Made by a program: the position numbers and the translations under genes. From Ramazzottius varieornatus (taxonomy: Eukaryota > Animalia > Tardigrada), in assembly GCA_001949185.1 (NCBI GenBank), contig BDGG01000012.1, forward strand, positions 426,973-490,972: a stretch of DNA of 64,000 nt, written 5' to 3'. Below are positions 13,112-61,851 of the stretch, in pieces (position 1 is the first letter of the stretch; each line of letters starts with the position of its first letter). The notes beneath the pieces were generated by a model. That model searched no databases. It was not told the DNA's origin and saw nothing but the letters and a program-made list of their open reading frames with translations.

Positions 13112-14909
13112 ATGTCGCTCGGTCGATTGGATCGACTGCGTTTCGTCGTACGGCAGTTTGCGACATCATCAACCATCTACGCTCGAGGAGCACCACGCTA
13201 TCCAAAGCCTATCCCTGAAAAGAAAACCTACAGCGAAGATGACTTGGCGCCTCAGGACTTCTCCCAGGGAAAAGATGCCTTTGCCAAACCAAAGCGTGAG
13301 TTCAGTATGGAAAAATTCACGCAAGCCGTGCGGGGAGATAGAACACCACGCAGACCGGGCGTCAGCGCTGACGCAGCTCGTTCTTCGTCCAGCAAGACTT
13401 TACGTCGCAAGACGGATTCTTTAGGATTCGAAGAAGATGAAGAGACTATGGAGGGACTCGAGGGGGACAGAACAGCCGAACCGTCCGCAAGAATCGGACC
13501 GAAGAAAGATTACGACACTTCGCCGATCAACAAAAGGCACTCGAGCGAGAGATCGACACCGAAAGAAGCTCCTACTGAGGATAACGAAGTACCGAGTAAA
13601 CATCAGAAGAAAAGGGAACCGAAACGAAGTGGAAGCAGCAAGCGGAACGAGACGGAAGGCCCACGGTACGAATAATGTATATCAACAGGCGCATGACGTC
13701 ATACATGACATCTGCGTGGTACAGAGGCGGCTGGGGGTTATTGAAGAGGTCCGCAATTTGGCCCTTTTTCCACGAAGTTGCTTATCAGGTCGCTCGGCAC
13801 ANNNNNNNNNNNNNNNNNNNNNNNNNNNNNNNNNNNNNNNNNNNNNNNNNNCTCCAGCCGCCTCTGGTGTGGTACCGTGCAGTGAGATAATGCGCCACTT
13901 GACCGAGGCAGAAGGTTTAGGAATGTTGCGGCCTGATTACCTCTTTTCCAGATCGCGATACCCGTTTCTGGACGACAAGAATCCGATATTTAAGAATACG
14001 GTGAATAAAGTCAAGAACCGTACGGAGCGGCTAAAGCATCGGCGTATCCTTCTCGAAGGCCATCGACTCGTCACCGAAGCCGTCAACAATGGTGTGAGAA
14101 TCGACTCGGTCTTCTTCTCCAACCCCGAAGCTTTAGCCTCCGTCAACGAAGCGGAGCTGCACGCGATGAAGGCCGACATCTACCACGTCTCTCCAAAACA
14201 GATGGCCCTCTGGTCGGACATGACCACGGCGCCAGGCATCATGGCGGTCGCGCACATGCCCAGTCCTTCCGTCATGGACATGCGGAAACAAATGCCGTTA
14301 ACCATCGTACTTGACAACATTCGTGATCCGAACAACATGGGGGCTATAGTCCGGGTCGTAGCTGGGGCTGCATGTACACAAATCATAGCCATGAAGGGAT
14401 GTGTGGATCCATGGGATGGCAAAGTGATCAGATCGGCCATGGGCTCGCACTTCCATGTACCCATTCACTATAACATGGAATGGGAACTGCTGAACAACTA
14501 CATTGACAACCCGGCGACTGTCTTTCTAGCGGATAACCTAGAAGATCGCCACTCTAGTGTTACGCTAGATCTCGAAGGCAAACAGTCACCGAGGTTGTTT
14601 CCCAGAAAACGTGACGCTCAGTTGGAGACTGTGCCGTACCATCACGTGGACTTTAGAGAAGGAAGTGTGGTGCTGATCATTGGCGGCGAAACGCACGGGG
14701 TCAGTCCTTTCGCCTACAGCATGACAAAAGAAAGAAATGGCAGGAAGTTGATTATTCCTTTGGGAAATTATGTTGAAAGCCTGAATGCGGCTTCAGTTGT
14801 TGCTGTTATTGCCTTTGAGATGCGCAGACAGAGGCTGTTGTTAGACGATGGCATCTCGGAGGACGCGGAAGTCTATGATCCGCAACCCGCTCCTGGCTTG
14901 CTACAGTAA
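13112..14909 (+). CDS. MRM3: Mitochondrial rRNA methyltransferase 3 (SpoU/TrmH SPOUT family), exons 13112-13665 and 13952-14909
   Basis: ILLEGHRLVTEA, IVLDNIRDPNNMGAIVR, GCVDPWDGKVIRSAMGSHF, LIIGGETHGVS, IIPLGNYVESLNAA. The Arg-rich N-terminus MSLGRLDRLRFVVRQFATSS looks like a mitochondrial presequence. Confidence 0.9.
13682..13904. repeat. Family-A intronic hairpin, interrupted by a MITE
   Basis: Arms TCAACAGGCGCAT and ATGCGCCACTTGA. Confidence 0.65.
13722..13866. mobile_element. hAT-type MITE (interior in N-gap) inserted in the MRM3 intron
   Basis: TIR CAGAGGCGGCTGG / CCAGCCGCCTCTG with 8-bp TSD GCGTGGTA / GTGTGGTA. Confidence 0.8.
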
Positions 14910-15336
14910 GGGTTTTTGGAGTTGTTTTTACCCCTCATCCTTCTGTTGTTTTGGTTTTTGTTATGATATTTCTTACATGTAAAATCGTAATATTACTTGG
15001 CTCCTCAGGTACCATTTTTTGGGCAGAACCTCGTGCGGAGACCCTGTTCTGGTAGTGTCTAGCAGCTTGCTGCAGATGAGACTGGCGCTGTCCGATTTTG
15101 CGAAAGCTAGCAGTTTTGTAGTTTGAGGATTCAGCAAAGCAGCGGAGAAAGGTTACCGACGTGCTGTGATCGGGAAATCGGACTAGCGGTGTCATCTTGA
15201 TTTCAAGTGCGGCAGCGTGCGGTTCGGCACGAAGGAAGGTTATTCGTAGGGCAAGCTGGATTATCCGATTAGACCGTATAGATGGCAAGGCCCAGTGGAG
15301 GACTTCAGTGGAATTTTGAACACTGTGTGGTTTAAA

Positions 15337-16769
15337 ATGGCATTCTCGCGCGCCATTCGGTTGGTCGGGTTTTTGGTTGTGGTTATTTCAATCCGTTCAA
15401 CTTTCGGAGGTAAACTAAGTTCTCTATCGGCTGTCTTCTTCAGTTCTCGTCAAAATCACGGAACGTCATTCTACTTCGTCAAAGCTTGACCTCCTATGTT
15501 CAAGATCTTCATTCGAGCAATGTCAACTTCCTTGTTGGTTCTTTGCAGTACCACGAACGCACCTGAGGTCCATCAACGCTGATCCGCTGTTCACAAAATG
15601 GCCCAACAGTACCATCCCGTACTACATCGATTCCGTCTACAGTAAGACCAGGTTCCTTTGTGTTTAACGTTTTCCCATTTCGAAGACTTGATCCAGTCAG
15701 TCAAGCTAAAAACTGCGTACCTGTATCGACTTCTGACTTCCGCTCAATGAGTCAAGTTGTCTATTAGCCTCAACCACCTGGCTTCTTATGTGTTAGCCAG
15801 TGTCTTTACTACTGTAGCTTCGAAACAAGCCCAGCTCATACGGTCCGCCGCACAGAAAGTAAGCACCGACATGTCTGGCTGCATCAAGTTCGTCGAAGTT
15901 AAGCCAACATCTGCTCAGTACAAGATCAAAGTTACACCCTTCAAGACTGGCACGTAAGATGTCTCGCATTGTATACGTCTATACATGCCCTACTTCCGCT
16001 TCCGAATTATTCTCTTCCCTCAGGAGTGTGAAAGAACTTCGCTGTTCAGCCTACCCTGGAATCTTTACTGGTTTCCAGCAAGCCGGATACAAGGAACAAC
16101 GCATAGTTCTCGTGGAGGGCGAACAAGGATGCCTTGATGGAACCCTCCATCCAATCATGAAGTATTTCACTATCATCCTGGGCAAGATCAACGAGCACCA
16201 GAGATCCGACAGGGACGACTTCATTAAAATCAATGAGACCAACCTTGTGGATAGTAAGTCGCAGCCATCCATCGTTTGGGAACATTTCCCATTATGTCGG
16301 ATGTCAACAAACAAAATGTGCAAGATTGTCGTCTCAAGTGGCTCAAGTGAAAACGATTCGGTCGAGTTCCTAAGTGGCGCACGTGTTATTGGCTTGAAGT
16401 TGAAGTGTGGGTCACTTTAGACAACGATCTTGTACGTCTCGTTGCCGGTCTTCCATGTGGAGCTTTGTTCTTTCAGACTCGCAGAATATCTACCGACAGC
16501 ACGATCTGACCGACACCTTCTCGACCTGTTCCTACGACTACTGCTCCATCACCCACAACCCGGAAACGATGTATACGCCGGACGGAAGTAAAGTGGGCTT
16601 CACAGTCCTCAAAGCGCCGTTCTACATTCCGAAGCTCACCCGCCTGTCAGAGTGCGATTGCAAGGACCTCAGCATCCTCTATGAATGCGAATCCAGCAAG
16701 TGCGAGCCATTGAACTGCGCTGGCTTGGTCAAGACCGCCGGCGACAAGAAGCTACCTGAGGGGCATTAA
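15337..16769 (+). CDS. Secreted astacin-fold (M12A) protein, catalytically inactive; 5 exons
   Basis: Signal peptide, KWPNSTIPYYID, GCIKFVEV, LGKINEHQRSDRDDFIKIN, YDYCSITHN. The zinc motif HExxHxxGxxH is replaced by KYFTIILGKIN. Confidence 0.85.
16321..16432. repeat. Family-A intronic hairpin (astacin intron)
   Basis: CAAGATTGTCGTCTCAAGTGGCTCA, an internal TTCCTAAGTGGCGCACG, and TGGGTCACTTTAGACAACGATCTTG. Confidence 0.8.
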
Positions 16770-17339: not shown

Positions 17340-20300
17340 TTAACTTCCGACAGCTGCATTTTCTTCCGTCACCGAACTTCGACTTCCTTCTCCTTTCTTC
17401 TCTTTGCGATGCTTCTTCCGGTGTTTCTTCTTATCGGTCGGCGAAGCTTCTCTCTTGGAATGCTTCTCCGACTTTGAAGCCTTGGAAGACTTGTCCTTTT
17501 TACTCTTGGACTTGTGTGATCGGCTGGACTTGTGCTTGCCCTCGACCACTTCACCAGCTTCCCTACTCTCCACCGAAGCATCCCGCTTCCTCGAAGACCG
17601 CTCTTTGTCCTTTTCACCACCGTTCGACTCCTTTCCCTGCCGTATACCCTCCCCCACACTCCTGGCGTCCACTATCTTGGACGTACCGGCTACTGAAAAA
17701 GAACACTGGAAATAAGACTTGAGTTAGCATTTGCGAAAACAGATGGAAGGTCGGCAGACAAACTCGATCAGACTGTCTTCTGAAGTGGCGCACGTTCTTA
17801 GTGTTACTGACCGAAAGCGTACACCATCTGAAAAATTTATCTGATCGAGTTCATTCCAGACTCAAAAATCACTCTTCTGAATTTATCATACTTGTAGTTT
17901 CATCTCAAAAATTTTCTGCTACTTTATATGCTGGAATATTTCCTGTTACAGCAAAAAAATTAACCAGTTCTGACTTGAGATACTTTTCTGGGGTACAGAT
18001 ATTTTGTTTTACAGTCTTACCGTCTTCCTTTTCTTTGCCACTCTTGCTCGACTTGTCCTTATCTTTCTTCGAGCTCCGCGACTTATGCGAAGACTTGTCC
18101 TTGTCCTTTGCGTCATCGTCCTTCTTCGACCTATGGCTCTTTCGGTCCTTGTCTTTATCTCGGTCGGACGGTTTCTGAGAGGATGAAGCATCGTCGCTCC
18201 TTCTCTTGACGTCCCGCTTGTCGGGCTTTGGTGTCTCACTTCGCGGTCTCTTCTCACGAGACTTCCAGTCAGTTTTCCAGTTCGCACCCTTCTCTTCCCG
18301 TTCTTCATCGCGATCTGAGGGTTTTCGCTCTTTGGACGACCGGTCCTTATCTTTACGAGAACTTCTGGAAGACTTACCGGAACGCTTCTCACTTCTTTCT
18401 TCCTTGTCTCCAGCTTTGTCGGAAGCGGATTTCTCCTCTTCGGCGCGGGAAGACGTCCGACTCTTTTCGGCGTTCTCTTGGCTCAGCAGTTCTGCCTCTC
18501 CCTCCTCCTAATAAAACAGACACAGCACTTCGTTAAAGTATTCCAATTCGGAAACCGAACCAACTGCCAATCCAGCGAAAGAAACAGGCAGCCGTTACAT
18601 CCACCTGCACACCCACGATCCGAACTAAACAAACTGCTCTAAGTATACAGGTGCATAAGATTCTGTAACATTTCGTTTGCCTACTTTCAATGTCTCATCC
18701 AATCATCCACTAATTTCATAACAGAAAACGACAATACCATGAAAATATAGAGTAAGGTAAGGTATTATTGGTACCTTCTCGTTGGAGTTTTTGCGACTGG
18801 ATCGTTTCTTGAGGGACTTTTGGTCGGCAGATTCACTTCGCGCCCTCTTTTCCTTCTTCCTGTCTTTATCTTTGTCTCTCCTCGAAGACCTCGACTTCTT
18901 AGATCGAGAACCATCGTCTTTACGATGAGAGGAAGAAGCTTCGGAAGTTTTGTCTGTATCTTCGCGTTCCTTTTCTTTCGGTGGTGAATCCAGGGGGTCG
19001 TTCGTTACTTGCGAAGACGCAGGGTCGTTCACACTAGGAAGACTTTCCTTGGCAGGAAGATTCAAGGGTTCATCGAAAGGCTTCGATGCTTCCGCCACTG
19101 TCAGCTTTTCCTTAGAATCAACACCTAAAACAAGAAGAGTAATAAAAAACCAACATCAGAGGCATTTGGAAGCTCGGTAAACAAACTTAACCAAATGGTT
19201 ATCCCCAGTGGCGCACGCATCCAGCGGGTAAAACTGATAACGTGCGCCACTTGGAAAAACGATTTGGTCAAGTTTGTTTATCGACCCTGCATTCTCAAAA
19301 ACTTACTTGTTGAATCTAACGACGGTCCCGGTTGCTGACTCGGTTCAGCTTTAACTTCCGGTACGGGTTTCACGTCTATTGTGTTCTCTTCTTCCTTCAT
19401 ATTCTTCGCATCCGGTACAGCTTTTTCCGCCACCGCGACTTCCGGTATCTTCTCCGGTTCTTTCTCTCGCTTCACCGTTCCAATCGTCTCAATCTTCCTT
19501 TCCGTCCTATCTGACCTGTCCTTGTCCCGATCACTCTTCCCCTTGGAAGACGGCGATAAGTTCTCGTCTCGCTTCCGGCGATCCCGATCACTCAGCCTCG
19601 AGTCCTTTTTGTCATCTGACCTGGACGAAGTCTCCCGCTTCCTGTCTCGTCGGTCAGGCGAGTAGTCTCTCGATCGTCTTCGTTCCGGACTGCGACTACT
19701 TCTTCGTCGGTCACGATCGTCATACTTGTCGTACTTGCTACTACGATCATCTCTTCTCCTGTCGTCATCTTTGTCCCGTCGATCTTTATCTCGGTAATCT
19801 TTGTCATCACTACGAGACGACTTCTCCGGAGACCGTCGAGGTGGGTCGTCGTTGTGAGGAGCCTGAATTGGCACTTTCGGTGTATTCGGAATTCTAAAAG
19901 TCAAAATGAATTAAAGCAATCAAAAGAATCCGAAAGCTCGGAAGCAATCCGAACCAAACCTTTTCCCAAAGCGGCGCACGTTTTTAGCATAGCTGCCTGG
20001 AAGCGTGCGCCACTGGGAAATGCAATCAGGTCCAGCTTGTTGGCCGAGCTCCCAAGTATGGGAAAAACCCTCCAAAGATTGGTTAAGTGGGAAAACTACT
20101 GGACAGATTGAACCTACCTTGTTATTCGGAGGTTCGGTAGAGGCTGCTGTTGTTGGCCAGGCACCATAGCTTGAGCAGGTATCGCCGGCAACTGCTGACC
20201 GTACATCGCTCGAACAGCGGCTGAAACAGAAAAGTACCGCGTCACGAAACAGCAAAGCTCCTCAGTCAACCTGAAGCAACAATCGCATCTTACCAGGATG

Positions 20301-27084: not shown

Positions 27085-30000
27085 CTACAAGTTATTCTCT
27101 TCGGCTGCTTCTCCTCCTGGGCCTTCTTCATCGGTCCACTCGTCCGACGCCGAGACGTAACCGCTATAGTCATTCTCTTCTTCTCCATCGTCCTCTTCGC
27201 CATCCTCCTCGTCCGGTCCGTCCATCCACTCATCTTCTTCGCCACCGTACATATCATCTGAGTTTAGAACATGATTATGAGTACGAAGTGCGAAGTGCGC
27301 CGCTGCTGTTGTGAAGGAGCCTACCGTAATCATCGCCGGAATCGTCTCCTCCATAGATGTCACTGTCGTTGTCATCATCGTCATCCTCGTCGCCATAATC
27401 GTCCTCGTCTTCTCCATGCTCTTCGTCAAGCTCCTCTTGTGTCTTTCCAATCCCAATTTGAAACAAGCGACCATACGACCAATGTGTTTCGTTGTACTGT
27501 TCGGCGAAAGCAATGTGATTGTCCAAACAATCTGTTGCCATTGCAGTGAACTTCTTCTTGAGATCCCATGTCGCTGGGAAAGAAAGAACCTTCGTCGAAA
27601 AAACTGCACATCAAACATTGAGGCTCGAAGGAAACCCCTAGTCTTACCAATGGTGCTGTAGTCGAATGCGTCGATGGTCAGAACCTGTCCCTTGTACTGG
27701 CCGTTGATTTGGTCCACTTCCTCGTCCTCGATGAAGGGCATGGCGTAGATAATGTGACCGGAAGCATTGAACATCATGTGGGACTTGTGAAGGGCCGGAA
27801 TGGACTTGAGTAACTTGAAGTTTCGTACATCCCACTAAAGAAAAAATCGCATCAGTGGCAGACTCAGAGCTAGTAAAACAAACTCGACGTGTTCGTCATC
27901 GCAGGTGGCGCACGCTACCGACCAAACGCACTCGAAATGTGCACCACTTGGGAATCCGACGACAACAATGACAAAATACGCCACTTGGGAAAGCGATGCC
28001 GCCGACAATCTTACCACTTCGGAGTCGATGATGATGGTGTTTCCATTGGTATGGAAGATCCCATTAGAAGTTTCACGTTCGAACTGATCGAACTTGTGGA
28101 TGAGTTGTCCACTCCTTGCGTCAAAGATAAGACCGTCGTGGGTGATGAGATCGTCGGAAGGATGGAAGCTTGGACGGTTCCTCGAGTAATGACCGCTCAG
28201 ACCGTTATTCTGAAACATCAAGGTCCGGATGCCCGTCTCCAAGTCCAGCAGCTGCAACAAGAAAACCTTCTCATTGAAGTTGAGGGCGACCATTGCAAAA
28301 GTTAACTTACGAAACTGTCTTCCAGCTGCAGTCCGATGCCCGTGTTCGATCTCCAGTGCGGCATGTCCAAGTAATGCGTGTTCTCGTACTGCTTCAACAG
28401 AGCACATTCGGACTCGCCGTTGAACCTCCACATGGAACTTGTCTCGGTACAACAACTGAGGAAGGTGTTCTGATTGTCACTAGCCAAGGCCTTCACGTGG
28501 TAAGTCTCGCAGATGTCATGGCAAGGCTTCGAGAAGGTCGGCTAGAAAAAAATATCAGTTGAGTACGTTGACACGTTCATGCAAGCATTCGTTCACAAAA
28601 CTGCATACTCAAACATCGTTGCTTAGCTGACGTTCATTTTATGTAGGTGCGCGAAAGGCTATCTAAAAATGCATTACCCTTGTCAAGTCGCGCAGGTTGT
28701 ATCCGACTACGTATCCCTCACTTCCGCCCATGACGATGTCTTTTTGCATCGCACCCAAGAACGACACGGAGAGCATCCCATCAGCCGGGTCGAAAACTCC
28801 TGGATCGACACTAGGGAACTCGATGTTGCTGACGTGCTTAAACTTGCTGAAAATGTGGTGTCGATCCAAGTTCCTGCCATACAGGTGACCATCGTACCTA
28901 CCCAGTCTGGCGGTCATTCGCATGCAGACATCGGCCGGTGGTCGGAGGAGGTTTGAGGGTGGCGCACATCGGTGCTTCCTCTGAAGGGAGAAAGGTGGAC
29001 ACAGGGCGATGGGGTGCTCACATTCGGCATGCTGAGCCCGGAAGCTGTTGGCTACGATACCGACGAGGTTCGGAAAGCCGTTGACTGTCGTAGGTGCATC
29101 GGTGGCGTCGAGGATCTCGTTCTTTTGAGTGGAGGCCAGAGAAGCCGGTGGAAGGCTCTTTGGTGTATGAGGAATCTTGAATCCGTTCGCTGGAGTAGCC
29201 GTGCTGGACGAAGAAGGCGAACTGAGAACTAGGAAAGAAGGTGCTCATGTTATAGATCACCTTCATGCATGTTATGCTGTGTGTATGTCTTACTTCCGGT
29301 TTGCCCTCTGACAATGCCAGGACTGATGGACAATCTATTCCTTCGCTCGGTTCGTTCGCTATTGGGCGTGTTCTGTACGGCGACCCTCTTCAAGCCGACT
29401 TCGTCAATCAGGCATTCAGCCGTGTTCTTCAGGTCACGACTCTCCAAATGAGCCAGAAGCAAAAGGTCTATCTCTTGAGAAGCGAAGGTGATTCTTGTTC
29501 GTTTCACAATGTCTTGCTTGGCCACGTAGTCCACCAGGTTCACCGGAATAGGGCTTTTCAGCTTGATTTCAAAGACCATCTCTAGTAACTCAGTGGCGTA
29601 CTTCTCGAACTTGGGACTGTCGATGGGATTTACGGACGTACTTTTGTCTCGTTGAATCAAAACTGCGAGAAAATCCATTGGTTCTATTCAGTATTAACCA
29701 CTTCACTAATTTCAAATTTGATTTACTACTTTTCCTACTTTGGTTCGGACTTTTATGATACCTTGAAGTTCTCCGCCACGGATGAAGGAGAGCTGCTGGA
29801 AGATCTGCCGACATGGTGCCGACCGAGCTATTCCAGCTAAAACCTTACAAGCCAGTGCTCGAAGTCCCGGCAAGTCTGATGGCTGCACTGGATCATCTTC
29901 GTCCGTAGCTTTGGGGTTCAGAATCCGCAGCATGTTGCGAATGCCGCGATATCTGCGCAACAGACCAACGAGCATCTCGAAGTGTCCGACATCGTTCCAG

Positions 30001-33000
30001 AACGGCCTGCCGACACCCTTCTTCTGAGACGCGAACTCGATCTCCACATCGGTCTTCTGCAATGCCAAAAGGCTAGCTTCGCAGTTAAATTTAAATAACG
30101 ACCATGAGACTGATATGACAAAGACTTACACCGGTTCGAAGCCCATAAACGCAGTTGGCAATGACTTGTAACGCTGCTTTTTGGATATCGACGTTATGAC
30201 CTTCTCTCGACAGTCGCAGAAGCAATCTTTCAAAAAGGCATCCAGATACAGAACTTTTCTCTAATTTGGAGAAATGTTGACTGCTTACCCAATTCCGCTG
30301 ATGGTCGACTCAGGGTTTCCAGGCGCGATTGGCTGGCTTTTGTAGGCGATGAGGACATCCTGGGCCTTCTGCGCCAGAACGCACTTCTCGAGTATCTCCA
30401 GGCACGACTTGTGGTACGGCGTGATACCGAAGTCCCTTATATTGATCCAGTCGACATCGACGATCTCCAGGATGATCAGCAGCCGGTCGATGCCACCGTA
30501 CTCGGCGAACCTGGCGACTCTGCCGAGCCAGCCGCGAGTGGCGCGACATAACGGCGTATTGGTCAGGATGTACTCTCGCAGGCTATCCAGACCTTCCTTA
30601 TCTTGTGTGAAAGCCTAGAAAAACATACCGACTTTCGAAATATTCTGTCGATAGACTATCTTAATAAAAGTTCGGCAAACAAACTCGACAACATTGCTTT
30701 CAAGTGGTGCACGTTCTCAGCGTTACCGGCTGGAGGCGTGGGCCATCTCATCGAGTTCCCAAGTGGCGCACGTTCTTACTGTTATCGGCCGGTACCGTGC
30801 GGTACTTGGAAAAAAACTTATCGAGTACGTTTGCCTGGTTCCCGTTTCATACCTTGTTGTGCGAAATTCCACGTTTCCCACTGCGAAACCACTCAGCTTT
30901 CATGATCATGTCGGTGGTGAAGTAAGTGAGCAAGGCTTGAAAGACGGCAGTCAAGGCTTCTGTGGCGGCGACCAGTTGTTCATCGGTGGCGAGTTCTCGT
31001 TCCAGTTCCCCCTGTTGCTTCCAGAAGTATTCGTAATGCGTTAGCTACAACCAGAAACATTACATGTCCGCCCTTGAAGTGACGGAGAAAGATAAAACGG
31101 CGGACATACCAAGTTGAGGAGTTGTCGTAAGCCTTCAGTGCCTTCCTGGTCGAAAACTTCCATAAACTGTCGGTACTGAAGAGCTTTGACGAAGAACTTA
31201 GCGGCCCACTTCCGGGCTGACTCGTGACCGGACTTCAAACCGGCTTCGACCATGTAGATAGTAGCTTGGGTAACCAGAAAGCTCGGGTAGCTGGCCTCAC
31301 CCGGATTCTTGATCATCTACGACAGCCAAACCATCAGAAAATCACCAAAAGTTCATAATCGAAATCCTAAACTAAAGCAGAAGCGTCGACTCACCGTTTC
31401 AAGGGCGTACTCGGACGACTGAACAATATTCATCATGACTTTGACGACAAAGACCGATGGGATGGACGGAAATGGGATCTTCAGTAACTGCGTTAGCCGA
31501 GTTGGAGTTTCAAAGAACTTTGAAGTGAATCTATGGTTCGTCAGAAGGTTGGCCAACAACTGCAAAAAGTTACATAGTCAGTATGATTAGCAGGTGGTGA
31601 AATAACATTAGAACGATACAGTTAACTTACAGATATGACCTGACCAAGTATTCGGACATTGATACGTTTCCTGTAGTCGAGAAACTCGTAGCATAGTCTC
31701 AAACCATCCTGCTCGTAGAAACCCGAGCCGAAGTCATCTGGTAGAGTGGCGAGCCCGACGAGGAAGTCAAGCGTTAACCTCACCTCCAGGTTCTCATCCA
31801 TCGGAAGTACCCTAAAGTTCTGCGATACTTCACCCATCTGCAGTCTCTCATACTCTGCCCACGACGAAGTCGAGGACGTCTCATCGATGTTTCTGACCTC
31901 AGAGACCGCTGAGTTTTGGTTCGACTTGAGCTTCTTCCTTCGAGGGGCAGAAGAGCTCGGTGTGCTCACGTCTGCCCCGATGTGGCTTCTGGATCTCTCT
32001 AAGCGACGCTTGGAGCCACTCTTTGGAACGGGAGGAGGCGTCTGGAATAACTGGGCCGCGTTATCGGTATCGGCATTCTGGGGAGCCTTGCTTGTGGATG
32101 GCGTTGATGGTGCGGGCTCGTTGCGCGACTCGGTTTCGCTGATGGTTGAGAAGAGTGGCCGGAAAGCCGTGAGGTATTCTCGGAGCCGACGAAAGCATCC
32201 GGAAACCTTTCACAACAGAAAATAGAGAAAAATATTCTATTAATAGAAAAGAATAAAGACAGAAACGAATACTCTATTGGATTAGTGTATGATCCGACTG
32301 AAATCCTGGACGTTGGTCTTACCAGATTTCGGACAGGGCCCAGCTTGATCCTGAACTCATCGATGACCACTCGTTCGAAGCACGTGCCATAAATTCCGAA
32401 AAGTAGCGCGCGTATTTCCGTCGCGTTGCGGGTTGGAAGGCGGACAGCTTGGGAAGAGGGTGGCTCGAAGGACATCATCTGCATGCATGGAAAGAAAATT
32501 TCGTCGTGTTCGAAGAACAGCCTCATGATCTCGGCGTCTTCCGTGTCGCTGGCGGAGAGACTCTGTACCACAGCATAGATGATCGCCGCTGCGTAATACT
32601 GGATGTCGGGATCGTTCTCGCTGTCGCACAAGTAAGAAACGCAAAGCTGGAACAGAAACCATACGTGGACAACCGGACGTAGAATCGCAAATTGTTACGT
32701 TCGATTGATTTGAGTCCATGTATCATCTTGATTGCTGAGAATGCAAATTTTGACATTTCGACATACAGCTTTGATGAGATCGTCGTCCACGGAATCATCG
32801 AAGATTTTCGACACTTTCTCCATCAGAAAGTGTATTTTAGGACTTTCAGACTCTCGGGAAGATAACACATCATCCGCAGGATCACGGTGAAGGCCAAGAG
32901 CTTCTTCGAAAGCTTCCTGGACAAGAAGGGCCAACCTGAAATTTTTCACGTTTAGCATTACGCTTACCGGTAATTTCCCATTACTAATCAACAGGTACTT

Positions 33001-42013: not shown

Positions 42014-43406
42014 TCAATGTGAAGCTTCCGTTCGAGACCAACCTCCAGAGTAAGGGTCCCATTCCCACTGCGGACGGTTTCTACAGTGTTCGCCCCAATG
42101 TCCGCACTTCCCGCAGTTATAGCAAGATTTTATTCTTGCTGGCCTCTTCGGGTTAGCCTTCCATGGAGGTTTACCTAAAGAACCTGAAAACCATTGGACC
42201 ATTACGCTTGGGAACAAAACCGAAGTTACGCTTGGGAACAGAGCAAGACTTGAGGACCGTACTTACCGGAAGGAATAGTTGTCGGCGTTTTGAGACCTTC
42301 TTCCCGACTGATACACGATCCACAACTGTACGAAGTTTTTAATCTCGCAGTACTGTCTGGACTTTGAGAGGCAGTCTGACATGCGAGAACATCAGTATCA
42401 GACAGTGACTTGATTTTTGGGTCGTCGGGAGGTCCAGGCTTTTCTACAACCGGGGGGTATCCTTGTTCATGGGGCAGTGTGGAACATGGTTCTCCGTTTT
42501 GTCCAGGATCCACATCTCCGAAATCACTGAGCAGGTGGGTAGACTCGAACGAATGATTAAGGCTAAACTCCTCTAGCTCTTCCGAGCACAGACTAGCGGT
42601 CGAAGTCCCTACTGAATTCATCAGAGGTAGAGCAGATAGGATCTGTGAACAATGTGACGTTGGCAAATCATTTACCCAATTCGGTTGTTAAAGTGGCGCA
42701 CGGTATTACTCTTACAATGGCCTTTGACAGTGGTACCATGCGCCACTTGGGAACTCGACGAATTTCGTTTACCCAGATAGCGCAGGCTATTAGCCAACAG
42801 CACTGGAAATGTGCGCCACTTGGGAAACTGTCGTTTTTTACTCACGGACGGTGTACGAATTGCTGTCCGTCGATTCACAAGTTCCACCGCCAACTGGCCA
42901 AGCCGGAGTCGCCGATGGAACCGTAATGCGGGATGCCGGTAGCCCATATTGATAATCATGAGAAGGTCCGATAAGACTTGGCCGTCTTCTAGTCGTCCCA
43001 AATGGCCTGGTATGTCCGCTTTTTCCAGGAAATCACAGATAATCTCTCCACAGGACGTGCTCAGAGTATGCAGAACACTAAAATCCAGGAGAACCTGGTT
43101 ACGAGTCATCTCGTTGGTAAGAAGCGACAGCGGTTCCATGCTGTCGTATGACTCGCGCATCGAGAAGACGTCGTTGGTTCGCCGTATGAGTTCTTGGGCT
43201 TCCACAACGCTTTGCCAATCTCTACCCATAAAGGAATGGAGGATAGTGTGGAAATAACGCACTTCTAAATTGGTCATAGTATTCAAAAGAGAAAAGAAGA
43301 TTTCGAGGCGTTCATGGTTATCGAGGCCCGTGTCCATCCATTCGCGGATTTTGCCGCCGGTTTCAAATACGGACGTCACCGGAAGTGCCGCTTCGGGCTT
43401 CTCCAT
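42014..43406 (-). CDS. ZCCHC14/ZCCHC2-like protein (conserved N-terminal helical domain plus C-terminal CCHC knuckle), 3 exons
   Basis: REWMDTGLDNHERLEIFFSLLNTMTNLEVRYFHTILHSFMGRDW resembles the ZCCHC14/2 N-terminus. C-terminal SCYNCGKCGHWGEHC. Confidence 0.7.
42691..42828. repeat. Tandem double family-A intronic hairpin (ZCCHC-like gene)
   Basis: AAGTGGCGCACGGTA / TACCATGCGCCACTT, then GTTTACCCAGATAGCGCA / TGCGCCACTTGGGAAAC. Confidence 0.85.
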
Positions 43407-49465: not shown

Positions 49466-51275
49466 ATGACATTGGAAGATCCACCATCGGGATTAATGTG
49501 GATGTCTGCTGGAGCAGTGTCGTTTCTAGTGGTATCCAGCTTGCTAGTTATCTGCGCTGAATTTAAACGTAAACAGTAAGTTGACCACGTCGTTGCTAAT
49601 AAATTACAATGTAACCACGTGACTTTGACGTCATCCGCGAGTTGATCGGGGAATCTTGACTGATACTTTTCCGTTTTCCAGGAACAAAACACTCAAAGCT
49701 GAGCCCGTCCAGCTTCTTTACAGGCGTAAGAATACGGATTACGGGGTAAGAAATTTTTCAACCGCTCTGGATCTAGTAGCGCGGTGACACTGATGGTGGT
49801 CGTTTGTTTAGGAAAGCGGTGGACGACCTTCAGCGGCTGTCAAGCAGACGACCTTGCAGCTGCCATCCAGCGTTGAAGCTCGCTCAACCTCTCCCACATG
49901 GCGCAACTCGTCTCTGAGCCGCGAATTACCGGCTATACCGGATTCACTGGAGCTGGGTGAAGGTGTTCGTGATGAGCGGTACGAGAGTGCTTCAAATCTC
50001 TACGCATACCTGGACGATGTGCGCACTAGAGAAGAGCACGAAAACGCCCAAGCTTCAGACTCTTCGCGGGACGCTGAACTTCCGGTGAGTCTTTGCTGTC
50101 CACCCATCTTCACAAGATCTTGAATGGACGTCTACGATAGTTGAGTGCGCTTGTTTCTGGCTGTAGGTGGTTCTTCCGAACGGACGTGTTCATCCCTACG
50201 ACCGCATTGGCGGACACGGTCCGCTCTCGCCAACTCTTCATGCCAACATGGCGCTAACACCGCCGCCAGTGTCCACTGCGCCCTTATTGTCCACCAGCAC
50301 TAACAACCATGCATTCATACTCAACCAAATGGACAACGAGCAGGAATATCGGGGTGGTAAAGAACTCGCATTATTCATTCCCGCCTCACAGAACTTAGGT
50401 TGGTCGGCTGGCATAGAATCTGATCGGTTTTCTGAATTTAGCACGCTCGGACATGTCCTATACCAGCATAACCGTGCGAGCACCGCTCTCCAATCTTCGA
50501 GCCAGACGTTTTTCCGAAGACGGCTACACTAAACTCTCCGGCGAAGAAAGCCATCTGTACGCTCAGGTAAGAATGATCCACACGCGGATGTCCGGCAAAC
50601 AGACTCGGCAAGATTGATTTTCCAGTGACGCACGCTTCCCATGTTATGGGTTAAGGGCGTGCGCCACTTGGGAAAACAGTCTTGCCGAGCTCTCACATCG
50701 TCGACGAGCCCGACCAATAAGAACCTCATGTACAGTGTAATGTGGTTTAGGTTGGGGGAGATTATGGTGGTTCGATGGTGTCGGACCCCAGTTCGGTGCA
50801 CATTTACAACGAGTTGTACGCCGAGATTGACGGGCGTAGCCAGATTAACCCGTACGCCACCAGTCGCTTAGCGGTGGTCCATCCTGCCGAGGCTGGTGAT
50901 GGTCCTTCCACATCCGGCATGGCGTCTGGTTCTTCCCGCAGTCCTCCGACACCGGAGGAGCTGGATAAACTGTACGCAAAGATCAACAAACGCAATCGTG
51001 CACCAGACACTCAGCCGTCTTTTGTAGAAACCCCGTCCAATCAAGTACCGAGACCTAGTGAGGTCTCTTCGCTGAATGATATGCGGGCTTCGGTGGACGA
51101 GGCTATCAGCACTATGGACACGTCTCTTTCCCGCTTTCTGGCTAATGGTACTTCATCCAGAGCGATTGATCAGACTAACACTCACACTGTAGACCGTAAT
51201 ATGAATCTCGAAAGATCACCGGTAGTGACAACGAGAAATCTCTCGCGCCGTGAACATGTTTATGAAGAAATGTGA
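49466..51275 (+). CDS. Single-pass transmembrane adaptor with multiple Tyr motifs (PAG1/Cbp-like), 6 coding exons
   Basis: Short ectodomain, TM LMWMSAGAVSFLVVSSLLVIC, basic KRKQ, then a disordered tail with SRELPAIP, LYAYL, PYDRI, YTSI, LYAQV, LYAEI, LYAKINK and VYEEM*. Exons join in frame. Confidence 0.75.
50604..50689. repeat. Family-A intronic hairpin (PAG1-like gene)
   Basis: CTCGGCAAGATTGATTTTCCAGTGACGCACGC / GCGTGCGCCACTTGGGAAAACAGTCTTGCCGAG. Confidence 0.92.
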
Positions 51276-51514: not shown

Positions 51515-54500
51515 TTATGAAAGGTATCTGGCTTCTACGCGGCTCTTCACTTCATGCAGAATATGGTTTCCGTACTGGGAGGCTAGAAGCGCGTCAAGAT
51601 TGACAGCGCGCTCTAAAGGACGGACTGCGGATGACGCCAGAACCCAGTTGATAACTTCATCGGCGACGAAACCGAGCTGCCTTTCCACACTCCGCTCGTA
51701 CACCACTGTAAAACAACAAGCATGAGCCGTACAATAGTCGCCCTAAATACTGTAATGCTTCTTTAACTTCGCGAATTACGTCCTAATACACGTGCAGTTG
51801 GACGCCGGTCCAAAAATTCTGCCCTATAAACCCCCTAAGGGATGTTTCGCGCGTATGATGACGTAGTTAGCGAAGTTCAAGAAGCATCACAGTAGTAAGG
51901 ATGCCCATTCCGCCTGACTTGCTTCCTGAGACGGAATTCGGAAAGGAATTCCTAATTTTCCTATTTTCCGTTTCCTAAAACGGCTCAACCAAAAATCGGA
52001 ATTCCAATACGGCAGTTCAAGGAGCAAAACACCAGTCGGGTGTACGTTAGGCCCGCCCAACAAGCTCAGCAAGATCGTTTCCAAGTGGCGCACGAATCCA
52101 GCCAGTTAAAATCACAACGTGCGCCACTTCGAGGTCATTTTTATCGAGTTTGTTTGCTCTGCTTTTATGTAGTGAGAAAAATGACACCAAAACTCGACCG
52201 ATCGGCGCAGAAAACGGGATTCCGCTGTGCAAAACCGGATTTTGATAAGCGGAATTCCGGCCAGATCCTTGTATTCCGAATCGGAATTCCAGCGTTCCCA
52301 ATCGGGCTCAGCCGGAACGGGGCGGAATTAGGAATGGAACGGAACGGAAAACGGAATGGGCATCCTAACTAAATAGTACAGTAGTTATTTCGAACGCAGT
52401 GCTGACTTTCCAAAAAGCTGCTAGTCAAGTTGGTGTCAGGCACGGCCTTGTCTATTCACCCGTAGAAAAAAGGGCAGAAAATGTGCTGTACTCGTACCGG
52501 CAATGTTTTCAGCAGTGAGTCTTTCCTGGATCAGCTCATCCAGCGCTGCCTGTTTCAGCTCGAATGCCAGGTACTGGTCGCTGAGCTGGACGACGTCGAG
52601 CAGCACCAGCGCTTGATGAAACATGAACTGCATCACGGGGCATTCTCGGACCTCGCAGCCGCAGAGATGGTGAACAAGGAGCGTCAATGCTTCCAAGGAG
52701 GTCTCGCTGATCTTGACCACCTTGTCCGTCTGGCCCTCGATGAAGTGGCCAGCAGTCAACATGGCCTCAAAGACCTCGGAGGACGCAGAGAGACGTCGAC
52801 GGTTGACCAGCAGATACTGCCCGTCGTCGACGCTCAGTGTCGCTTCTTGGGCGGAAGTGAGACCCAGAAGACTCTCCGCGTACTGGCAACACTCCATTGG
52901 CGCGTCGTCTTCGACATCCGCAGTATTTCTATGGCAGAAAACAGAACGTCATCGGCGGATAGCCGTCAGAAAAACTTTGATTGGGAGCTGGTCAAACAAA
53001 CAACAAGATCGACATCTCATGAGGCGCACATTCTCGTCAACACTGAATAGTAACGTGCGCCACTTGAGACAACAACCGTGCACTACTTTTTGTTTGCCTA
53101 GCTCTCAATTGTTAGGGAGACTTACGTCGGCAGGTGCGTGGCTTCTTGTGCATAATTCTCGCTACCTGTGACGAAGAAGCCATGCAAGGCCTGGGCAAAC
53201 ATGACTCGATCCCCGACATTCCCCTCCAGGTTCATGGCCACTTGCATCAACTGGTCCATGACAACCTCCTTCCCGAAGAACTTTCTTCGGTCCGCGCTTG
53301 TCTGCAGCAGCAACGCCGCACTGGCGATGCAAGTAAGTCTCACGTCTGGCGACGAGCGCAGACAGAGATGCAAGAGCTCGCCAAAGCCAAAATGGCTCTC
53401 CCCTTGTCTTCTCATCTGTTTCAGCAAGCTGGTCTTTTCTTTGGTATTCCCTCTTCCGTCAGTGTTCGCTTCGATGAAATCAGGATGGTGTAGCATTAGC
53501 GGAAAACCGTGTTTGATCAACGGCTGAAAGCACAAGTGTGAGCGAATGATATGGGCTAGAATCGAAACGGCGTCCTCTGGTGTGGCTTGTGAGCTGGTAT
53601 TACTGCCTCTGGTCCTGCTTTTGGTGTTTTGGGAGAGGTAAGCCACTAAACTACCCAAAGTACTTTTGCCCGTGAGACTGGGTGCTAATTCGTTACGGTA
53701 GGATATGGAACCGAAGAAGGCCATGATGTAATCGACAGCCTTCTCCGCGTTGCGCTTCGTCCACTTGGAACTTATGTTGTCGGTTACAGTGTGGGTATCT
53801 GTGTCTGTAGACGTGTGGAGTTTTTTGTTACTGTTTGGTGAGTGTTCCGAAGGTTCATCGGATAGTTTTCTCTTCAGTGGCGATCTTGGAGGATCGGATC
53901 CGCTAGTCGAAGGCGATGCCTCTTTCTCTAGACCCAGATTGGCCACGGCCTACGAAGACGGAAGAGAGAATGCACGACTCTGTCGATAACCGAAACGCTG
54001 GCAAAAGATTTCCGCAGATCGTTATGCCAAGTGGCGCGAATCACCATTGTCACAAGCTGGGGCGTGCGCCACTTGGGAAAACGATCTAGGTAAACTCATT
54101 TGGCAGCTGACATACACCCGGAAGTCAAATTACCGTGACAAGTTGGCTACTGTCAGTGTCCATGGCTTCCTCTTGGTGGACCACGGGTGACCATCGGCCA
54201 CCACCACCGTCCGCTTCAAGGCTTGTTGTGTGTGTAGGCGACGTAACCGAACTGGGCGATGACTGTCCCGAGAAGCGGCCTGGACTGAATGGGTTTCCCG
54301 ACCACATGGACCTGCCGGGACTACCTTCATACTCTCTCATTTCTTGTGGCAGCGACGGTGGCGAGAAGACCGGACTGTTTAACATGGCCGAGACCATCGG
54401 CCACTCTTGTCGACTTTGTAGGGGAGTGTTTTGCGCGGCATAGTTGGCCTGAACTTCTCGCTGGTACGAAGGACTACTGGCACTGTATATCACACTCTGA

Positions 54501-56271: not shown

Positions 56272-56747
56272 TGCTTCCAGTCCCACAAACTCGTAGGAGC
56301 ATTACTTCATCGCAGCACTTCGCGTGTCCAGGGAGTTCAAATAGAAGACTCACTAAACATCATCAAACGGTGCCATTAGGTTATGAGCACAGAGAAAAGT
56401 TCAGGAAGCCAGGAAACCCAGGAGTCCAGGACCAAGGTGAACCGTGAACACGTGAAACTGCACTGCAAAAAGTTGAAACGTCTTGAGGAAGACATTCTGA
56501 CATACTGACAGACTGCACGTCATGTCATATAGCGAAACTTATAACGTACTCTTCACTCAAACATTCCGGATTTCGGAAGAACTAATTGCAGCTTTTGATT
56601 CCGATGCGAGACGAGGTCTTGATAACCTCGTTTATTTTCATCCAACAGCTGAAATCTGGAAATTCGTCAAAAAACATCATTTTCCTCTTGACCTTTCCGG
56701 ATCGAAAATGAGATCGTTCTCTCCGAAAGAAAGCTGGTACACAGTCT

Positions 56748-59700: not shown

Positions 59701-61851
59701 AGCCTGGAAACACAGAGTGGAGTTACTGCAGATATATATAAAGCTAGGCAGCAGACAAAAAGAAAGTGCTGTAGGGATACGATGACGTACCTGCCAACAG
59801 ATGACAGTTGCTGTAGTGTCAAAACCTCCGATGATCCTTGGCGCTCCGCGGATGCGTTCTTTTCGTCGACCATTCAAGTTCATTCTGTGGACAGATGACA
59901 ATCTTCGCTTGCTCTTGAACTGCGAAACAATGCCGAAAGGGTCTACGGCTCCATTTCCGGGTAGGCCGCAGCCTTCTCCGGAGGGAGGAGCAGGTGTAGT
60001 GGAACCTCCAGGCGCTGGCGTGACGGTTCCTGTGTCGGAAATGACCACATCACCGACCAGTGCATTCTGTTGGATCCACGAAAGGTAGAGCGGCAGTTTG
60101 GTATTCTGGCCTCCTAAGCCCGCACCACAAGTCTCTGATCCAAAGGAGAGGAGACCCGCGGCATAGTGCGAACTCGTAGTCGGATCGAAGCAAGCTAAAG
60201 CACCTCCTAGAAAATATATCGGCAGTTAAGTGACGCGAGAGACCCGGTGGACGAGACGTCCAGCGTCGTCATGTCAAGTGGCGCACACTTCCAGCCAAAA
60301 ACAACGCAAACAGGCGCCACTTGAGACACCAGTTTACACTTCTCGTCCACCTTGTGGTAAAGAAACCCAAGAGCAGAAAACCTATGCGAACCTTGGTCTT
60401 CCAAACAGGAATCCTGGCCGGCGGAACCCCCAGCACCTACAAAGCATATATTTGGATAACATACTGACATTCTTATTTATGACGTGTGGTCCTTTTACAG
60501 ATGAACAGGGAAGTATCCGTTTCGGCGGTTCCTGCCGCGTTTGCAAAGACCGGGCAGGCCGCCACGTCGTCTTCGCTGATGATCGTCTGAGCCACCCATT
60601 TCAGCGGTATTGGAGTATTCGAGACTACAAGCAACAGACCATAGAACATCTATCGAAAGCCCCAACGTCTCAAAAGGTACTTACGAGTCAAGTTGGCATT
60701 GTCGAAGCCATATCCACTGACAATGCACTTCTCCTCGACATTCGGCTGGCGGTTCTTCAGACAAAGCGTACAGGCACACGTCTTGCTGCTCAGGTCAATA
60801 GCACTGGCCAGCGTTATGATGGCCACATCATTGTTGTTCAGTTCGTAGTTGAAGTCTGGATGGGCGGTGATGGACTGAACCTCGAAGGTTTGCGCACACC
60901 CAGTTGGGTCGTTCGCGTTGGTGTCCGGTGCGCCATTGTCAATGGCTCCGACGACGATCTGGAACTGGCTCGCTGACATCTGCGTTCTGCGAACCAAGAA
61001 GGAACGTAAATTTCTATCGAGTGAATTCACGCGAAGTACTCACGCTGTGTCGAGGTCGTAAAGACAGGCAGCCGTCGTCAAGATGGTCCGACTTCCGATG
61101 ATAACTCCGCCGCATAACTGGAGGAACTGGGTAGCCGTTGCAGCCCACACGAGGACCTGCAAAAAGAAATATCATTTATCTCATACACAGTCGCAGATCT
61201 ATGTATTTGGGGAAGTGAAGATTCTCGTTTTCCCAAGCGACGCACACTTCCAGCCAGTACCAAAGGATGAGTACGCCACTTGACTCAACGGTATATATTT
61301 GGTTTGTTTGCCGACGTCGCATTTCAGGCCAAAGGGTTCGACTGAGCATCACTTCAGTGGTGTACCTGCCAGCAGATTTGAGAAGGAGCCGTTGTGGCGC
61401 CTCCAATGATCCGTTGGTTATTATTTCCACTTAGTCGACGCCTGGAGAACTGACCGAATGCGCGAGGGTCCGCTTCAAGCAGTTCAACATCTCTACTCCT
61501 CCGCGCGGAAGCTGCAAACTGAGCGGCCAGTCCGAACGGATCAGTCTGGCCGTCACCAGTGCGACCACAGGCTTCGGTGGTGCTCTGTCGTAAGAAAGAA
61601 TGCGCGACCGAAGCCAGAACCTGCTTCCGTGTGAGTACATTTCTCCCACGGTTCTTGTGAGTTTCACGGCGGCTGAATACGTTTCGATGCGGACGGAAAG
61701 AACTTGGAGGACTGGCCTCACTGATGAAGTTGTCCATCGTCAAGCGAGGGTTCTTCTGGCTCAGTCTTTTCTTGATGAGCCTGATGCCGCCTACTTCGGC
61801 CATGATAAGAAATAATCCAAGAAAATATATCAGACGGAAAATTCCCAACAT
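56748..61851 (-). CDS. Secreted polyprotein of three tandem trypsin-like (S1A) domains with a Ser/Thr-rich tail
   Basis: Signal peptide and three RIIGG..ICWQ..CGG domains. Domain 1: LTTAAC / EDQGG. Domain 2: LASASC / GDSGG. Domain 3: LTAGHC / DNDI / DSCFGDSGG. Confidence 0.88.
60273..60327. repeat. Family-A intronic hairpin (protease gene)
   Basis: TCAAGTGGCGCAC / GGCGCCACTTGA. Confidence 0.8.
61226..61290. repeat. Family-A intronic hairpin (protease gene)
   Basis: CGTTTTCCCAAGCGACGCAC / GTACGCCACTTGACTCAACG. Confidence 0.75.

What the first reader, a model, noticed from the sequence alone, without database searches (positions are those of the whole stretch)
13682..61290. Family of intron-restricted stem-loops (CCAAGTGGCGCACG core) across the whole window that may fold enlarged introns back to short effective length
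Seen: 15 loci (13682, 16321, 17761, 19178, 19935, 27893, 30682, 35112, 42691, 50604, 52059, 52993, 54016, 60273, 61226) carry inverted arms GATCGTTTTCCCAAGTGGCGCACG..CGTGCGCCACTTGGGAAAACGATC around an unconserved loop, usually ~22-30 nt. All lie in introns of nine unrelated genes on both strands. I saw none in intergenic DNA, even in the MITE-rich 3-13 kb region. Host introns are mostly ~180-240 nt (e.g. 19125-19306, 35060-35263, 50567-50750, 53949-54134), versus ~55-95 nt for ordinary introns here, so removing the ~85-105 nt hairpin leaves a near-normal length. No consistent TSD was evident. Inference: either a tiny palindromic mobile element tolerated because it self-pairs in pre-mRNA, or a domesticated structural splicing signal, dsRNA/ADAR substrate, small-RNA precursor or protein-binding site. 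I do not recognise it as a described family.
Basis: partly seen in the sequence, partly recalled or inferred. Interest (0 to 1): 0.85.

Follow-up and report, generated by a model that had tools for sequence, protein, structure and literature searches.

The report
Old hairpin transposon relics filling introns
The repeated hairpins are decayed copies of a 123-base miniature jumping element, probably of the Sola type, that landed about ten thousand times in existing short introns of a tardigrade. They are spliced out with the intron and are not a maintained RNA signal, though two inner 10-base boxes are unusually well kept.

Summary
Fourteen of the 15 loci are copies of one palindromic family. 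The 15th (13682, across the assembly gap) is a different palindrome that carries only the core box.

The unit is a 123-bp near-perfect palindrome flanked by a 4-bp target-site duplication, 5'-ANNT-3'. It is the published hallmark of Sola transposons, so I read the family as an old, dead, Sola-like MITE with about 10,000 copies.

RNA contigs show four host introns (182-328 nt) cleanly spliced. Element-free neighbours are 64-86 nt. Removing the element leaves a normal intron (median about 84 nt, never under about 52), so it entered existing introns and did not create them.

The arms decay independently: 63% of positions are paired against 62% expected, with no covariation in the box. The hairpin still folds, but only through inertia.

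Two things remain unexplained. First, density per kb is roughly 15-50 times higher in short introns than in long gaps, and target-site availability does not account for it. Second, the two inner 10-bp boxes and their spacing have diverged about three times less than the rest.

This scan has already reported the same family in at least six other stretches of this genome. New here are the TSD, the Sola assignment, the residual-intron analysis and a TSD-based clock.

The parts
16298..16454 (.). Composite copy (two cores: 16298-16343 and 16344-16454) in intron 16254-16476 of a + strand gene
   Evidence: nhmmer. Intron joint GT..AG seen in 4 RNA runs.
17745..17865 (.). Full-length copy in intron 17693-18020 (328 nt) of a - strand gene
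   Evidence: RNA joint CT..AC.
19168..19290 (.). Best-preserved copy (123 bp). Flanking 4-mers are ATTT (19164-19167) and ATTC (19291-19294). Host intron 19123-19304 (182 nt, - strand). Without the element and one TSD copy the intron is 55 nt.
   Evidence: RNA joint.
19931..20053 (.). Full-length copy in intron 19894-20117 (224 nt, - strand)
   Evidence: RNA joint.
27876..27954 (.). Partial copy (inner part; a further fragment lies at about 27964-28005) in predicted intron 27835-28014 (- strand)
   Evidence: No RNA check.
30666..30843 (.). Composite two-core copy in predicted intron 30615-30852 (- strand)
35098..35210 (.). Copy in predicted intron 35060-35263 (+ strand)
42654..42827 (.). Composite two-core copy in predicted intron 42609-42845 (- strand)
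50586..50692 (.). Copy in predicted intron 50567-50750 (+ strand). The capped model preferred another strand, so the boundaries are uncertain.
52047..52166 (.). Full-length copy inside a long (about 790 nt) predicted last intron, 51707-52496, of the ARMC5/BTB-like - strand gene. The intron also holds another inverted repeat at 51733-51909.
   Evidence: Read by eye, no RNA check.
52983..53106 (.). Full-length copy in predicted intron 52929-53125 (- strand)
53992..54106 (.). Copy in predicted intron 53950-54133 (- strand)
60266..60330 (.). Partial copy (box-centre-box only). Host intron model 60195-60337 is low-confidence.
61225..61320 (.). Partial copy. Host intron model 61157-61454 is low-confidence.
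13681..13903 (.). Not a typical member. A separate palindrome whose arms (13681-13735 and 13852-13903) carry the core box at their outer ends. It encloses the N gap at 13802-13851 and lies in predicted intron about 13668-13951 of the MRM3/SpoU-like gene.
   Evidence: Continuity across the gap was not tested.

Best explanation
The stem-loops are relics of an ancient non-autonomous DNA transposon (a MITE). The host is a 55.8-Mb animal genome whose size, contig number and earlier scan notes point to the tardigrade Ramazzottius varieornatus.

The ancestral unit was a 123-bp near-perfect palindrome. It begins GGGAGCTCGGCAAAC, carries the inner box AAGTGGCGCA on each arm, and has a centre of about 9 nt. 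It duplicated a 4-bp 5'-ANNT-3' (mostly AWWT-like) target on insertion. That duplication is the published hallmark of Sola1/Sola2 transposons, so a Sola-type transposase most likely moved it (inferred).

About 10,000 copies remain. All are old: no two are more than about 83% alike.

Copies sit inside introns that already existed. They lie at least 9 nt from the 5' splice site and usually at least 22 nt from the 3' splice site, and they are removed with the intron (shown for four loci).

In pre-mRNA the insert is predicted to fold on itself. This would keep the splice signals close together and may be why a 123-nt insert was harmless in 55-90-nt introns (inferred). The fold survives today only because about 20-25% decay per arm is too little to destroy a 57-bp stem. 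It is not maintained by selection.

The strong excess in short introns is real and its cause is not settled. Candidates are differential retention, where intergenic copies were lost to selection or deletion, and insertion bias towards transcribed gene bodies.
For: Family and copy number:
- 17 units in the window and 37 in an arbitrary 200 kb of contig C1, about 185 per Mb.
- 2,819 loci keep both 8-mers at the fixed spacing, against 0 in the control.

Palindrome and ends.

TSD:
- The middle two bases of the left and right flanking 4-mers co-vary in direct orientation (z 3.2 and 3.6, n=43).
- In an independent genome-wide set, 12 of 36 are identical against 3.9 expected (P=6e-5).
- Among non-palindromic pairs, 8 match directly and 0 in inverted orientation.
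- AWWT/AWDT is described as a hallmark of Sola1 (PMC3845634) and as the TSD of Sola2 (PMC3627910).

Age: the best matches to any copy are 73-83% identical.

Splicing: GT..AG joints in 4 RNA runs from 4 studies.

Pre-existing introns:
- 36 confident host-intron models have a median length of 213 nt.
- The residual without the element has a median of 84 nt and a 10th percentile of 60 nt.
- The 19168 copy leaves a 55-nt intron.

Enrichment:
- 2.0 copies per kb in coding-flanked gaps under 100 nt, against 0.04-0.12 per kb in gaps over 500 nt.
- 77-82% of blocks have flanking exon and splice evidence above the shuffled flanks.
- Introns are only 34% of non-coding DNA (PMC5531438).

No maintenance of the fold. 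The fold still forms.
Against: - No autonomous partner or Sola transposase was sought or found, so the superfamily call rests on the TSD alone. The TIR shares only its first two bases with published Sola1 MITEs.
- A neutral relic does not explain two things: the inner 10-bp boxes keep 0.92 identity against 0.72 for the outer arms, and their spacing is unchanged in 85% of copies against 56-65% for equal-length stretches of the arms.
- Intron calls outside 16-22 kb come from my own crude model, not from annotation or reads.
- The sample is about 350 kb, 0.6% of the genome.
Confidence: 0.8

Rival explanations
1. The inner boxes (AAGTGGCGCA and its inverted partner 27 bp away) have been co-opted in thousands of copies. 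They would act as a paired binding site for a sequence-specific protein, for instance a host factor or a domesticated transposase DNA-binding domain. The MITE origin still holds, but many copies would now be functional cis-elements.
For: - With the boxes masked in the search model, box identity is 0.92 against 0.72 for the outer arms in an arbitrary 200-kb sample.
- In indel-free arms the figures are 0.90 against 0.75. G/C sites inside the box keep 0.89 against 0.71 outside it.
- Upstream and downstream boxes are equally kept, 0.922 each. That fits a symmetric DNA site.
- The spacing is better kept than arm length.
- The TSDs, which date each insertion, are at least as decayed as the outer arms: 30-33% remain intact. 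The boxes were therefore spared after insertion, not only before.
Against: - No binding protein is known and no motif match was tested.
- It would require constraint on roughly 70% of about 20,000 boxes, which is a very large number.
- Part of the outer-arm divergence is subfamily variation and misalignment in homopolymer runs.
- A local mutational cold spot is not excluded.
Confidence: 0.25
2. The hairpin is a maintained RNA structure that folds enlarged introns back to a short effective length and is needed for their splicing.
For: - All 39 full-length copies are still predicted to pair end to end.
- Inserts avoid the last ~22 nt of the intron and the first 9 nt.
- There is a slight excess of sense-strand G-U over A-C mismatches, 290 against 244.
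Against: - Pairing is 63% against 62% expected from independent decay of the arms.
- The box shows no covariation beyond slid controls.
- The terminal parts of the arms, which would close the loop, are among the least conserved (identity 0.75).
- Introns of 267 and 314 nt with no intact element are spliced.
- The G-U excess is what transcription-linked mutation asymmetry would give.
Confidence: 0.07
3. The element is an introner: it created the introns that it sits in.
For: - The chance that a gap between coding segments holds a copy is about 10-17% whatever the gap's length.
- Another MITE in this genome was reported by the scan to act as an intron (s1-794825, not checked here).
Against: - After removing the element, every well-modelled host intron keeps at least ~52 nt with its own splice sites and pyrimidine tract.
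- Both TSD copies lie inside the intron.
- Distances from the element to the splice sites vary from 9 to about 195 nt.
Confidence: 0.02
4. The intronic hairpins act as dsRNA sources: substrates for ADAR editing, or precursors of endo-siRNAs or mirtron-like small RNAs.
For: - Imperfect stems of about 42 bp are predicted in pre-mRNA.
- Low-depth RNA contigs retain element-bearing introns.
- One run shows A>G at 16313 and 16316 inside a copy.
Against: - That run differs from the reference at 17 places in 6 kb, including exons, so the changes look like strain variation.
- No Rfam family matches.
- No small-RNA data could be examined.
Confidence: 0.05

Closest known systems
Sola1 and Sola2 DNA transposons and their MITEs (e.g. 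Sola1_NA of Bombyx mori and Rhodnius prolixus; PMC3845634, PMC3627910)
   Same: 4-bp AT-rich TSD of the form AWWT/AWDT, terminal inverted repeats that start with GG, a short non-coding unit, and hundreds or more copies.
   Different: The tardigrade unit is only 123 bp and is palindromic over its whole length. Its TIR sequence is unrelated beyond the first two bases. No transposase partner was identified. Copy number is far higher, and copies concentrate in introns.
Genic MITEs of plants and nematodes (Tourist/Stowaway; palindromic intronic repeats of C. elegans). From general knowledge.
   Same: Small palindromic non-autonomous elements that are enriched in or near genes, fold into hairpins, and are tolerated in introns.
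   Different: Those use TA or TWA duplications. The per-kb excess in 55-90-nt introns seen here is stronger than the usual 'near genes' bias.
Introners and introner-like elements (Micromonas, Aureococcus, fungi). From general knowledge.
   Same: High-copy elements found in introns. Some are MITE-like with a TIR and TSD and have stable predicted structure.
   Different: Introners supply or recruit the splice sites, so the intron is essentially the element. Here a complete ordinary intron remains once the element is removed.
SETMAR and the Hsmar1/MADE1 MITEs of primates (a domesticated transposase that still binds thousands of MITE ends). From general knowledge.
   Same: A possible analogy for the well-kept boxes: a short sequence-specific site dispersed by a MITE and retained genome-wide.
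   Different: No binding protein is known here. The conserved site is internal, next to the centre, not terminal.
Structural 'zipping' of long yeast introns, where complementary segments bring the 5' splice site and branch point together. From general knowledge.
   Same: An intramolecular helix shortens the effective distance between splice signals.
   Different: In yeast the pairing is needed for efficient splicing. Here the pairing shows no sign of being maintained.

Membership tests
MITE (non-autonomous class II element) | Terminal inverted repeats | tested here: met
   The consensus is a perfect palindrome of about 57 nt per arm; model position p pairs with position 188-p.
MITE (non-autonomous class II element) | Target-site duplication flanking the element | tested here: met
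   4-bp ANNT. Direct co-variation of the middle bases, z 3.2 and 3.6. 12 of 36 identical against 3.9 expected, P=6e-5; 8 direct against 0 inverted.
MITE (non-autonomous class II element) | Small, non-coding, high copy number | tested here: met
   123 bp. About 185 units per Mb in an arbitrary 200 kb. 2,819 loci with both boxes intact.
MITE (non-autonomous class II element) | Autonomous partner with the same ends | not tested
A pattern tool cannot span kilobase gaps.
Sola superfamily | 4-bp AT-rich TSD, AWWT/AWDT | tested here: met
   The outer bases A and T are near-invariant (0.69-0.82). The middle bases are W-W in 58-67% of old copies.
Sola superfamily | DDD transposase of the Sola type encoded by related full-length elements | not tested
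Sola superfamily | TIR related to known Sola elements | tested here: inconclusive
   The TIR starts GGGAGC, against GGACCG in Sola1_NA. Only two bases are shared.
piggyBac, Kolobok or Ginger2 (other 4-bp TSD superfamilies) | TTAA or TATA duplication | tested here: not met
   The flanks read A..T, not T..A.
Introner | The element spans the intron and supplies or recruits the splice sites, having inserted into an exon | tested here: not met
   The residual intron has a median of 84 nt and a minimum of ~52 nt. Flank lengths are variable. Both TSD copies are intronic.
Conserved structured RNA element | Base pairs kept by compensatory change, with pairing above the neutral expectation | tested here: not met
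   63% of positions paired against 62% expected. In the box, 9 two-sided changes against 7.3 expected, with slid controls at 7-14. The outer-arm excess (201 against 150) fits palindromic subfamily variants.
Conserved structured RNA element | Match to a described RNA family | tested here: not met
   No Rfam match at gathering score in the window. Only chance-level hits at E<=1 over two copies.

The most novel reading that the evidence does not exclude
The two inner 10-bp boxes, held 27 bp apart, are not mere relics. They would be retained in thousands of introns as paired binding sites for a sequence-specific protein, perhaps a domesticated transposase domain. A dead MITE would then have wired a genome-wide, intragenic cis-element network in a tardigrade.
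Probability: 0.2. Interest if true: 0.7.

Novelty: new member of a known kind. Interest (0 to 1): 0.35.

Why it matters
By itself this is an ordinary thing: an old MITE family, here given ends, a TSD and a likely superfamily for the first time.

It accounts for a noticeable share of intron length in a very compact animal genome. About 10,000 copies of about 125 bp come to roughly a tenth of the 12.4-Mb intron span. This explains why introns fall into two size classes, about 55-90 nt and about 180-240 nt.

Two open points could matter more widely. One is why a DNA transposon survives almost only in minimal introns. Possible reasons are targeting of transcribed linker DNA, or shelter from deletion and selection. 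The other is why two short boxes and their spacing have resisted decay in situ.

Anyone annotating tardigrade genes, or scanning them for 'conserved intronic hairpins', should mask this family first.

Tried and rejected
1. Orthologous-intron test. 

2. More genome sample.

3. Orientation relative to the host gene. This was abandoned because only about 9 central bases are asymmetric, so strand scores are nearly equal.

4. Target availability as the cause of intron bias. Rejected: AWWT occurs 23.8 times per kb in short gaps and 25.6 in long gaps, with AT content 57% against 55%.

5. Introner reading. Rejected.

6. Metagenome scan for the box pair. It returned 104 hits, about 75 of them one identical hairpin of a gut bacterium and the rest unrelated bacterial hairpins with other spacings. 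None carries the arms. This is not evidence about other tardigrades.

7. Rfam. Nothing found.

8. A-to-I editing. Contigs of one divergent run cannot show it.

9. My first intron finder over-extended introns. The capped version reproduced all four RNA-proven introns exactly.

10. Searches were script errors or empty runs.
Full report
**What is there.** The core motif is far above chance. It has 20 matches at <=2 mismatches in the window against 0.30 expected. It has 1,720 exact matches in the 55.8-Mb assembly against none for the reversed control. They also recover 37 units in an arbitrary 200 kb of contig C1 (L001-L020). That is about 185 per Mb, or roughly 10,000 genome-wide. Consistent with this, 2,819 loci still carry both 8-mers of the box at the right spacing, against 0 in the control. 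About one locus in five is a composite with two cores.

**Anatomy.** Per-column consensus over 114 units gives a perfect palindrome in which model position p pairs with position 188-p. It starts GGGAGCTCGGCAAAC, has the box AAGTGGCGCA on each arm, and has only about 9 unpaired central bases. The element proper is 123 bp. Conservation stops four bases beyond each end. Those four bases read A-N-N-T on both sides.

**The 4-bp flanks are a target-site duplication.** If the flanks belonged to the palindrome, the two sides would be reverse complements. Instead the two middle bases agree in direct orientation. Identity excess is z=3.2 and z=3.6 at exactly the expected cells of a 17x17 scan (n=43). 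An independent genome-wide pattern search found 52 loci against 0 in the control. Of the 36 usable loci, 12 have identical middle dinucleotides against 3.9 expected (P=6e-5). Among non-palindromic pairs, 8 match directly and none in inverted orientation.

**Likely superfamily.** A 4-bp AWWT/AWDT duplication is described as a hallmark of Sola1 transposons and their MITEs (PMC3845634), and as the TSD of Sola2 (PMC3627910). TTAA (piggyBac, Kolobok) and TATA (Ginger2) do not fit flanks that read A..T. I therefore call this a Sola-like MITE. The assignment rests on the TSD alone, since no transposase was looked for.

**Age.** No copy anywhere in the genome is more than about 83% identical to any of three query copies. 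The family is long dead.

**Where it sits.** RNA-derived contigs from four studies laid on 16000-21999 show GT..AG joints for twelve introns.
- The four introns that hold copies are 223, 328, 182 and 224 nt long.
- Six element-free neighbours are 64-86 nt.
- Two further long introns (267 and 314 nt) hold no intact copy. The 267-nt intron may hold an internally deleted relic.

For the best copy (19168-19290), removing the element and one TSD copy leaves a 55-nt intron with its own donor, branch-like site and pyrimidine tract. The insertion point is 12 nt past the 5' splice site.

I built a capped splice-and-coding model for the other loci. It reproduced all four RNA-proven introns exactly. Across 36 confidently modelled host introns:
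- Median length is 213 nt.
- The residual without the element has a median of 84 nt, a 10th percentile of 60 nt and a practical minimum of about 52 nt.
- The 5' flank is at least 9 nt and the 3' flank is usually at least 22 nt.

The elements therefore entered existing introns and were filtered away from the splice signals. They are not introners.

**Enrichment.** I defined coding segments with a self-trained codon model. Copy density is 2.0 per kb in gaps under 100 nt (element length excluded), 1.2 per kb in gaps of 100-200 nt, and 0.04-0.12 per kb in gaps over 500 nt. Between 77% and 82% of blocks have flanking exon and splice evidence above the 99th to 90th percentile of shuffled flanks. Published figures give 35% exon, 22% intron and 43% intergenic for this genome (PMC5531438). 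Introns are thus only a third of non-coding DNA, and 14 of 14 loci in introns in this window is very unlikely by chance. At least one 'long gap' copy (52047-52166) turns out by eye to lie in a long intron, so the true intronic share may be higher. Target availability is not the reason: AWWT frequency and AT content are the same in short and long gaps. I cannot separate insertion bias (transcribed or nucleosome-free gene bodies) from differential retention (purging from compact regulatory DNA, or loss through large deletions that introns cannot tolerate).

**Is the hairpin maintained?** It is not.
- Over 4,843 pair cells, 63.2% are Watson-Crick against 62.3% expected from the column frequencies.
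- In the box, two-sided changes number 9 against 7.3 expected, within the range of slid controls.
- The outer arms do show an excess of two-sided changes (201 against 150; slid controls 110-148). This fits palindromic subfamily variants, such as the CAAG/CTTG and CCAG/CTGG forms.
- Reading mismatches on the host sense strand gives G-U 290 against A-C 244. This is a marginal bias of the kind transcription-linked mutation produces.

All 39 full-length copies nevertheless still fold end to end (mean MFE -51.6 kcal/mol, z about -6, about 42 pairs across the centre). It is not a conserved function. This contradicts the companion note s1-794239.

**The boxes.** I checked the earlier agents' claim with ascertainment that cannot favour the boxes.
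- With the boxes masked in the search profile, the arbitrary C1 sample gives identity 0.92 in the 10-bp boxes, 0.72 in the outer arms and 0.66 in the centre.
- Restricting to indel-free arms gives 0.90 against 0.75. G/C sites keep 0.89 inside the box against 0.71 outside it.
- The box CpG keeps 0.96, while the other CpGs are the most decayed positions.
- Upstream and downstream boxes are equally kept, 0.922 each.
- Box-to-box distance is unchanged in 85% of copies, against 56-65% for equal stretches of the arms.
- 94 of the first 100 genome-wide box pairs span 42-43 nt.

Selection for mobility before insertion could conserve a transposase site. However, the TSDs, which date each insertion, are intact in only 30-33% of copies. 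They are thus at least as decayed as the outer arms, so the boxes have been spared since insertion. I have no tested explanation. A paired protein-binding site is the leading idea. A local mutational cold spot, or residual alignment bias in the homopolymer-rich arms, cannot be excluded.

**The gap locus.** The stretch 13681-13903 is a different palindrome. Its arms (13681-13735 and 13852-13903) carry the box at their outer ends and share an unrelated inner segment. The N run lies between them. It sits in a predicted intron of an MRM3/SpoU-like gene, with a donor near 13668 and an acceptor at 13950-13951. I did not test continuity across the gap, because the one read-laying run was used elsewhere. 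The locus is excluded from every count.

**Limits.**
- Only one 6-kb stretch could be checked against RNA.
- A metagenome scan for the box pair returned only unrelated bacterial hairpins.
- Rfam has no match.
- Full-text searches found no description of this family.

**Verdict.** This is a new member of a known kind: an old Sola-like MITE lodged in pre-existing introns. Two questions remain open, the intron bias and the protected boxes. The same family was already reported by this scan in at least six other stretches of this genome.

Noticed in passing
window 3099-3253, 4419-4618, 12258-12362, 51733-51909: Other, unrelated inverted-repeat elements with 30-60-nt arms that are 78-89% complementary. 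Three lie in the gene-poor 3-13 kb stretch and one in the same long intron as the 52047 copy. They look like other MITE families that do occur outside introns.
   Followed up: no
window 16024-17692: RNA contigs join exons of a + strand gene (joint GT..AG at 16253/16477) to exons of the convergent - strand gene (CT..AC joints from 17057 on). The two genes therefore appear to overlap at their 3' ends.
   Followed up: no
window 18507-18773: A 267-nt spliced intron with no intact copy but with GGCAAACGAAAT and CAGTTTGTTTAG pieces about 35 nt apart. It may be a copy that lost its centre (nhmmer E=0.065).
   Followed up: partly
window 16313 and 16316: One RNA run (X10) reads G for A at two places inside a copy, in a low-depth intron-retaining contig. 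The same run differs at 15 other places in 6 kb, so this is probably strain variation and not editing.
   Followed up: no
window 60266-60337: In the low-confidence model of this host intron, the 5' splice site (GTAAAC on the - strand) falls inside what looks like the decayed outer arm of the copy. If true, the element supplied a splice site here. There was no RNA check.
   Followed up: no
family-wide (model positions 40-41, 53-54, 62-63 against 77-78): CpG sites in the outer arms are the most decayed positions (0.59-0.82 identity), while the CpG inside the box keeps 0.96-0.97. This hints at CpG-specific mutation that spares the box.
   Followed up: partly
L001-L020 (C1:1,000,001-1,200,000), e.g. 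C1 positions 1,166,258-1,166,487 and 1,145,567-1,145,800: Several two-core composites share nearly the same internal junction (model position about 124-132 joined to about 46-52). This suggests a dimeric subfamily that transposed as a unit. The window's own composites have different junctions.
   Followed up: partly
L051 and about 75 further metagenome loci: A common gut bacterium has a 45-nt hairpin whose stem happens to be the same 10-mer pair with a 25-nt spacer. It is unrelated to the tardigrade element.
   Followed up: partly
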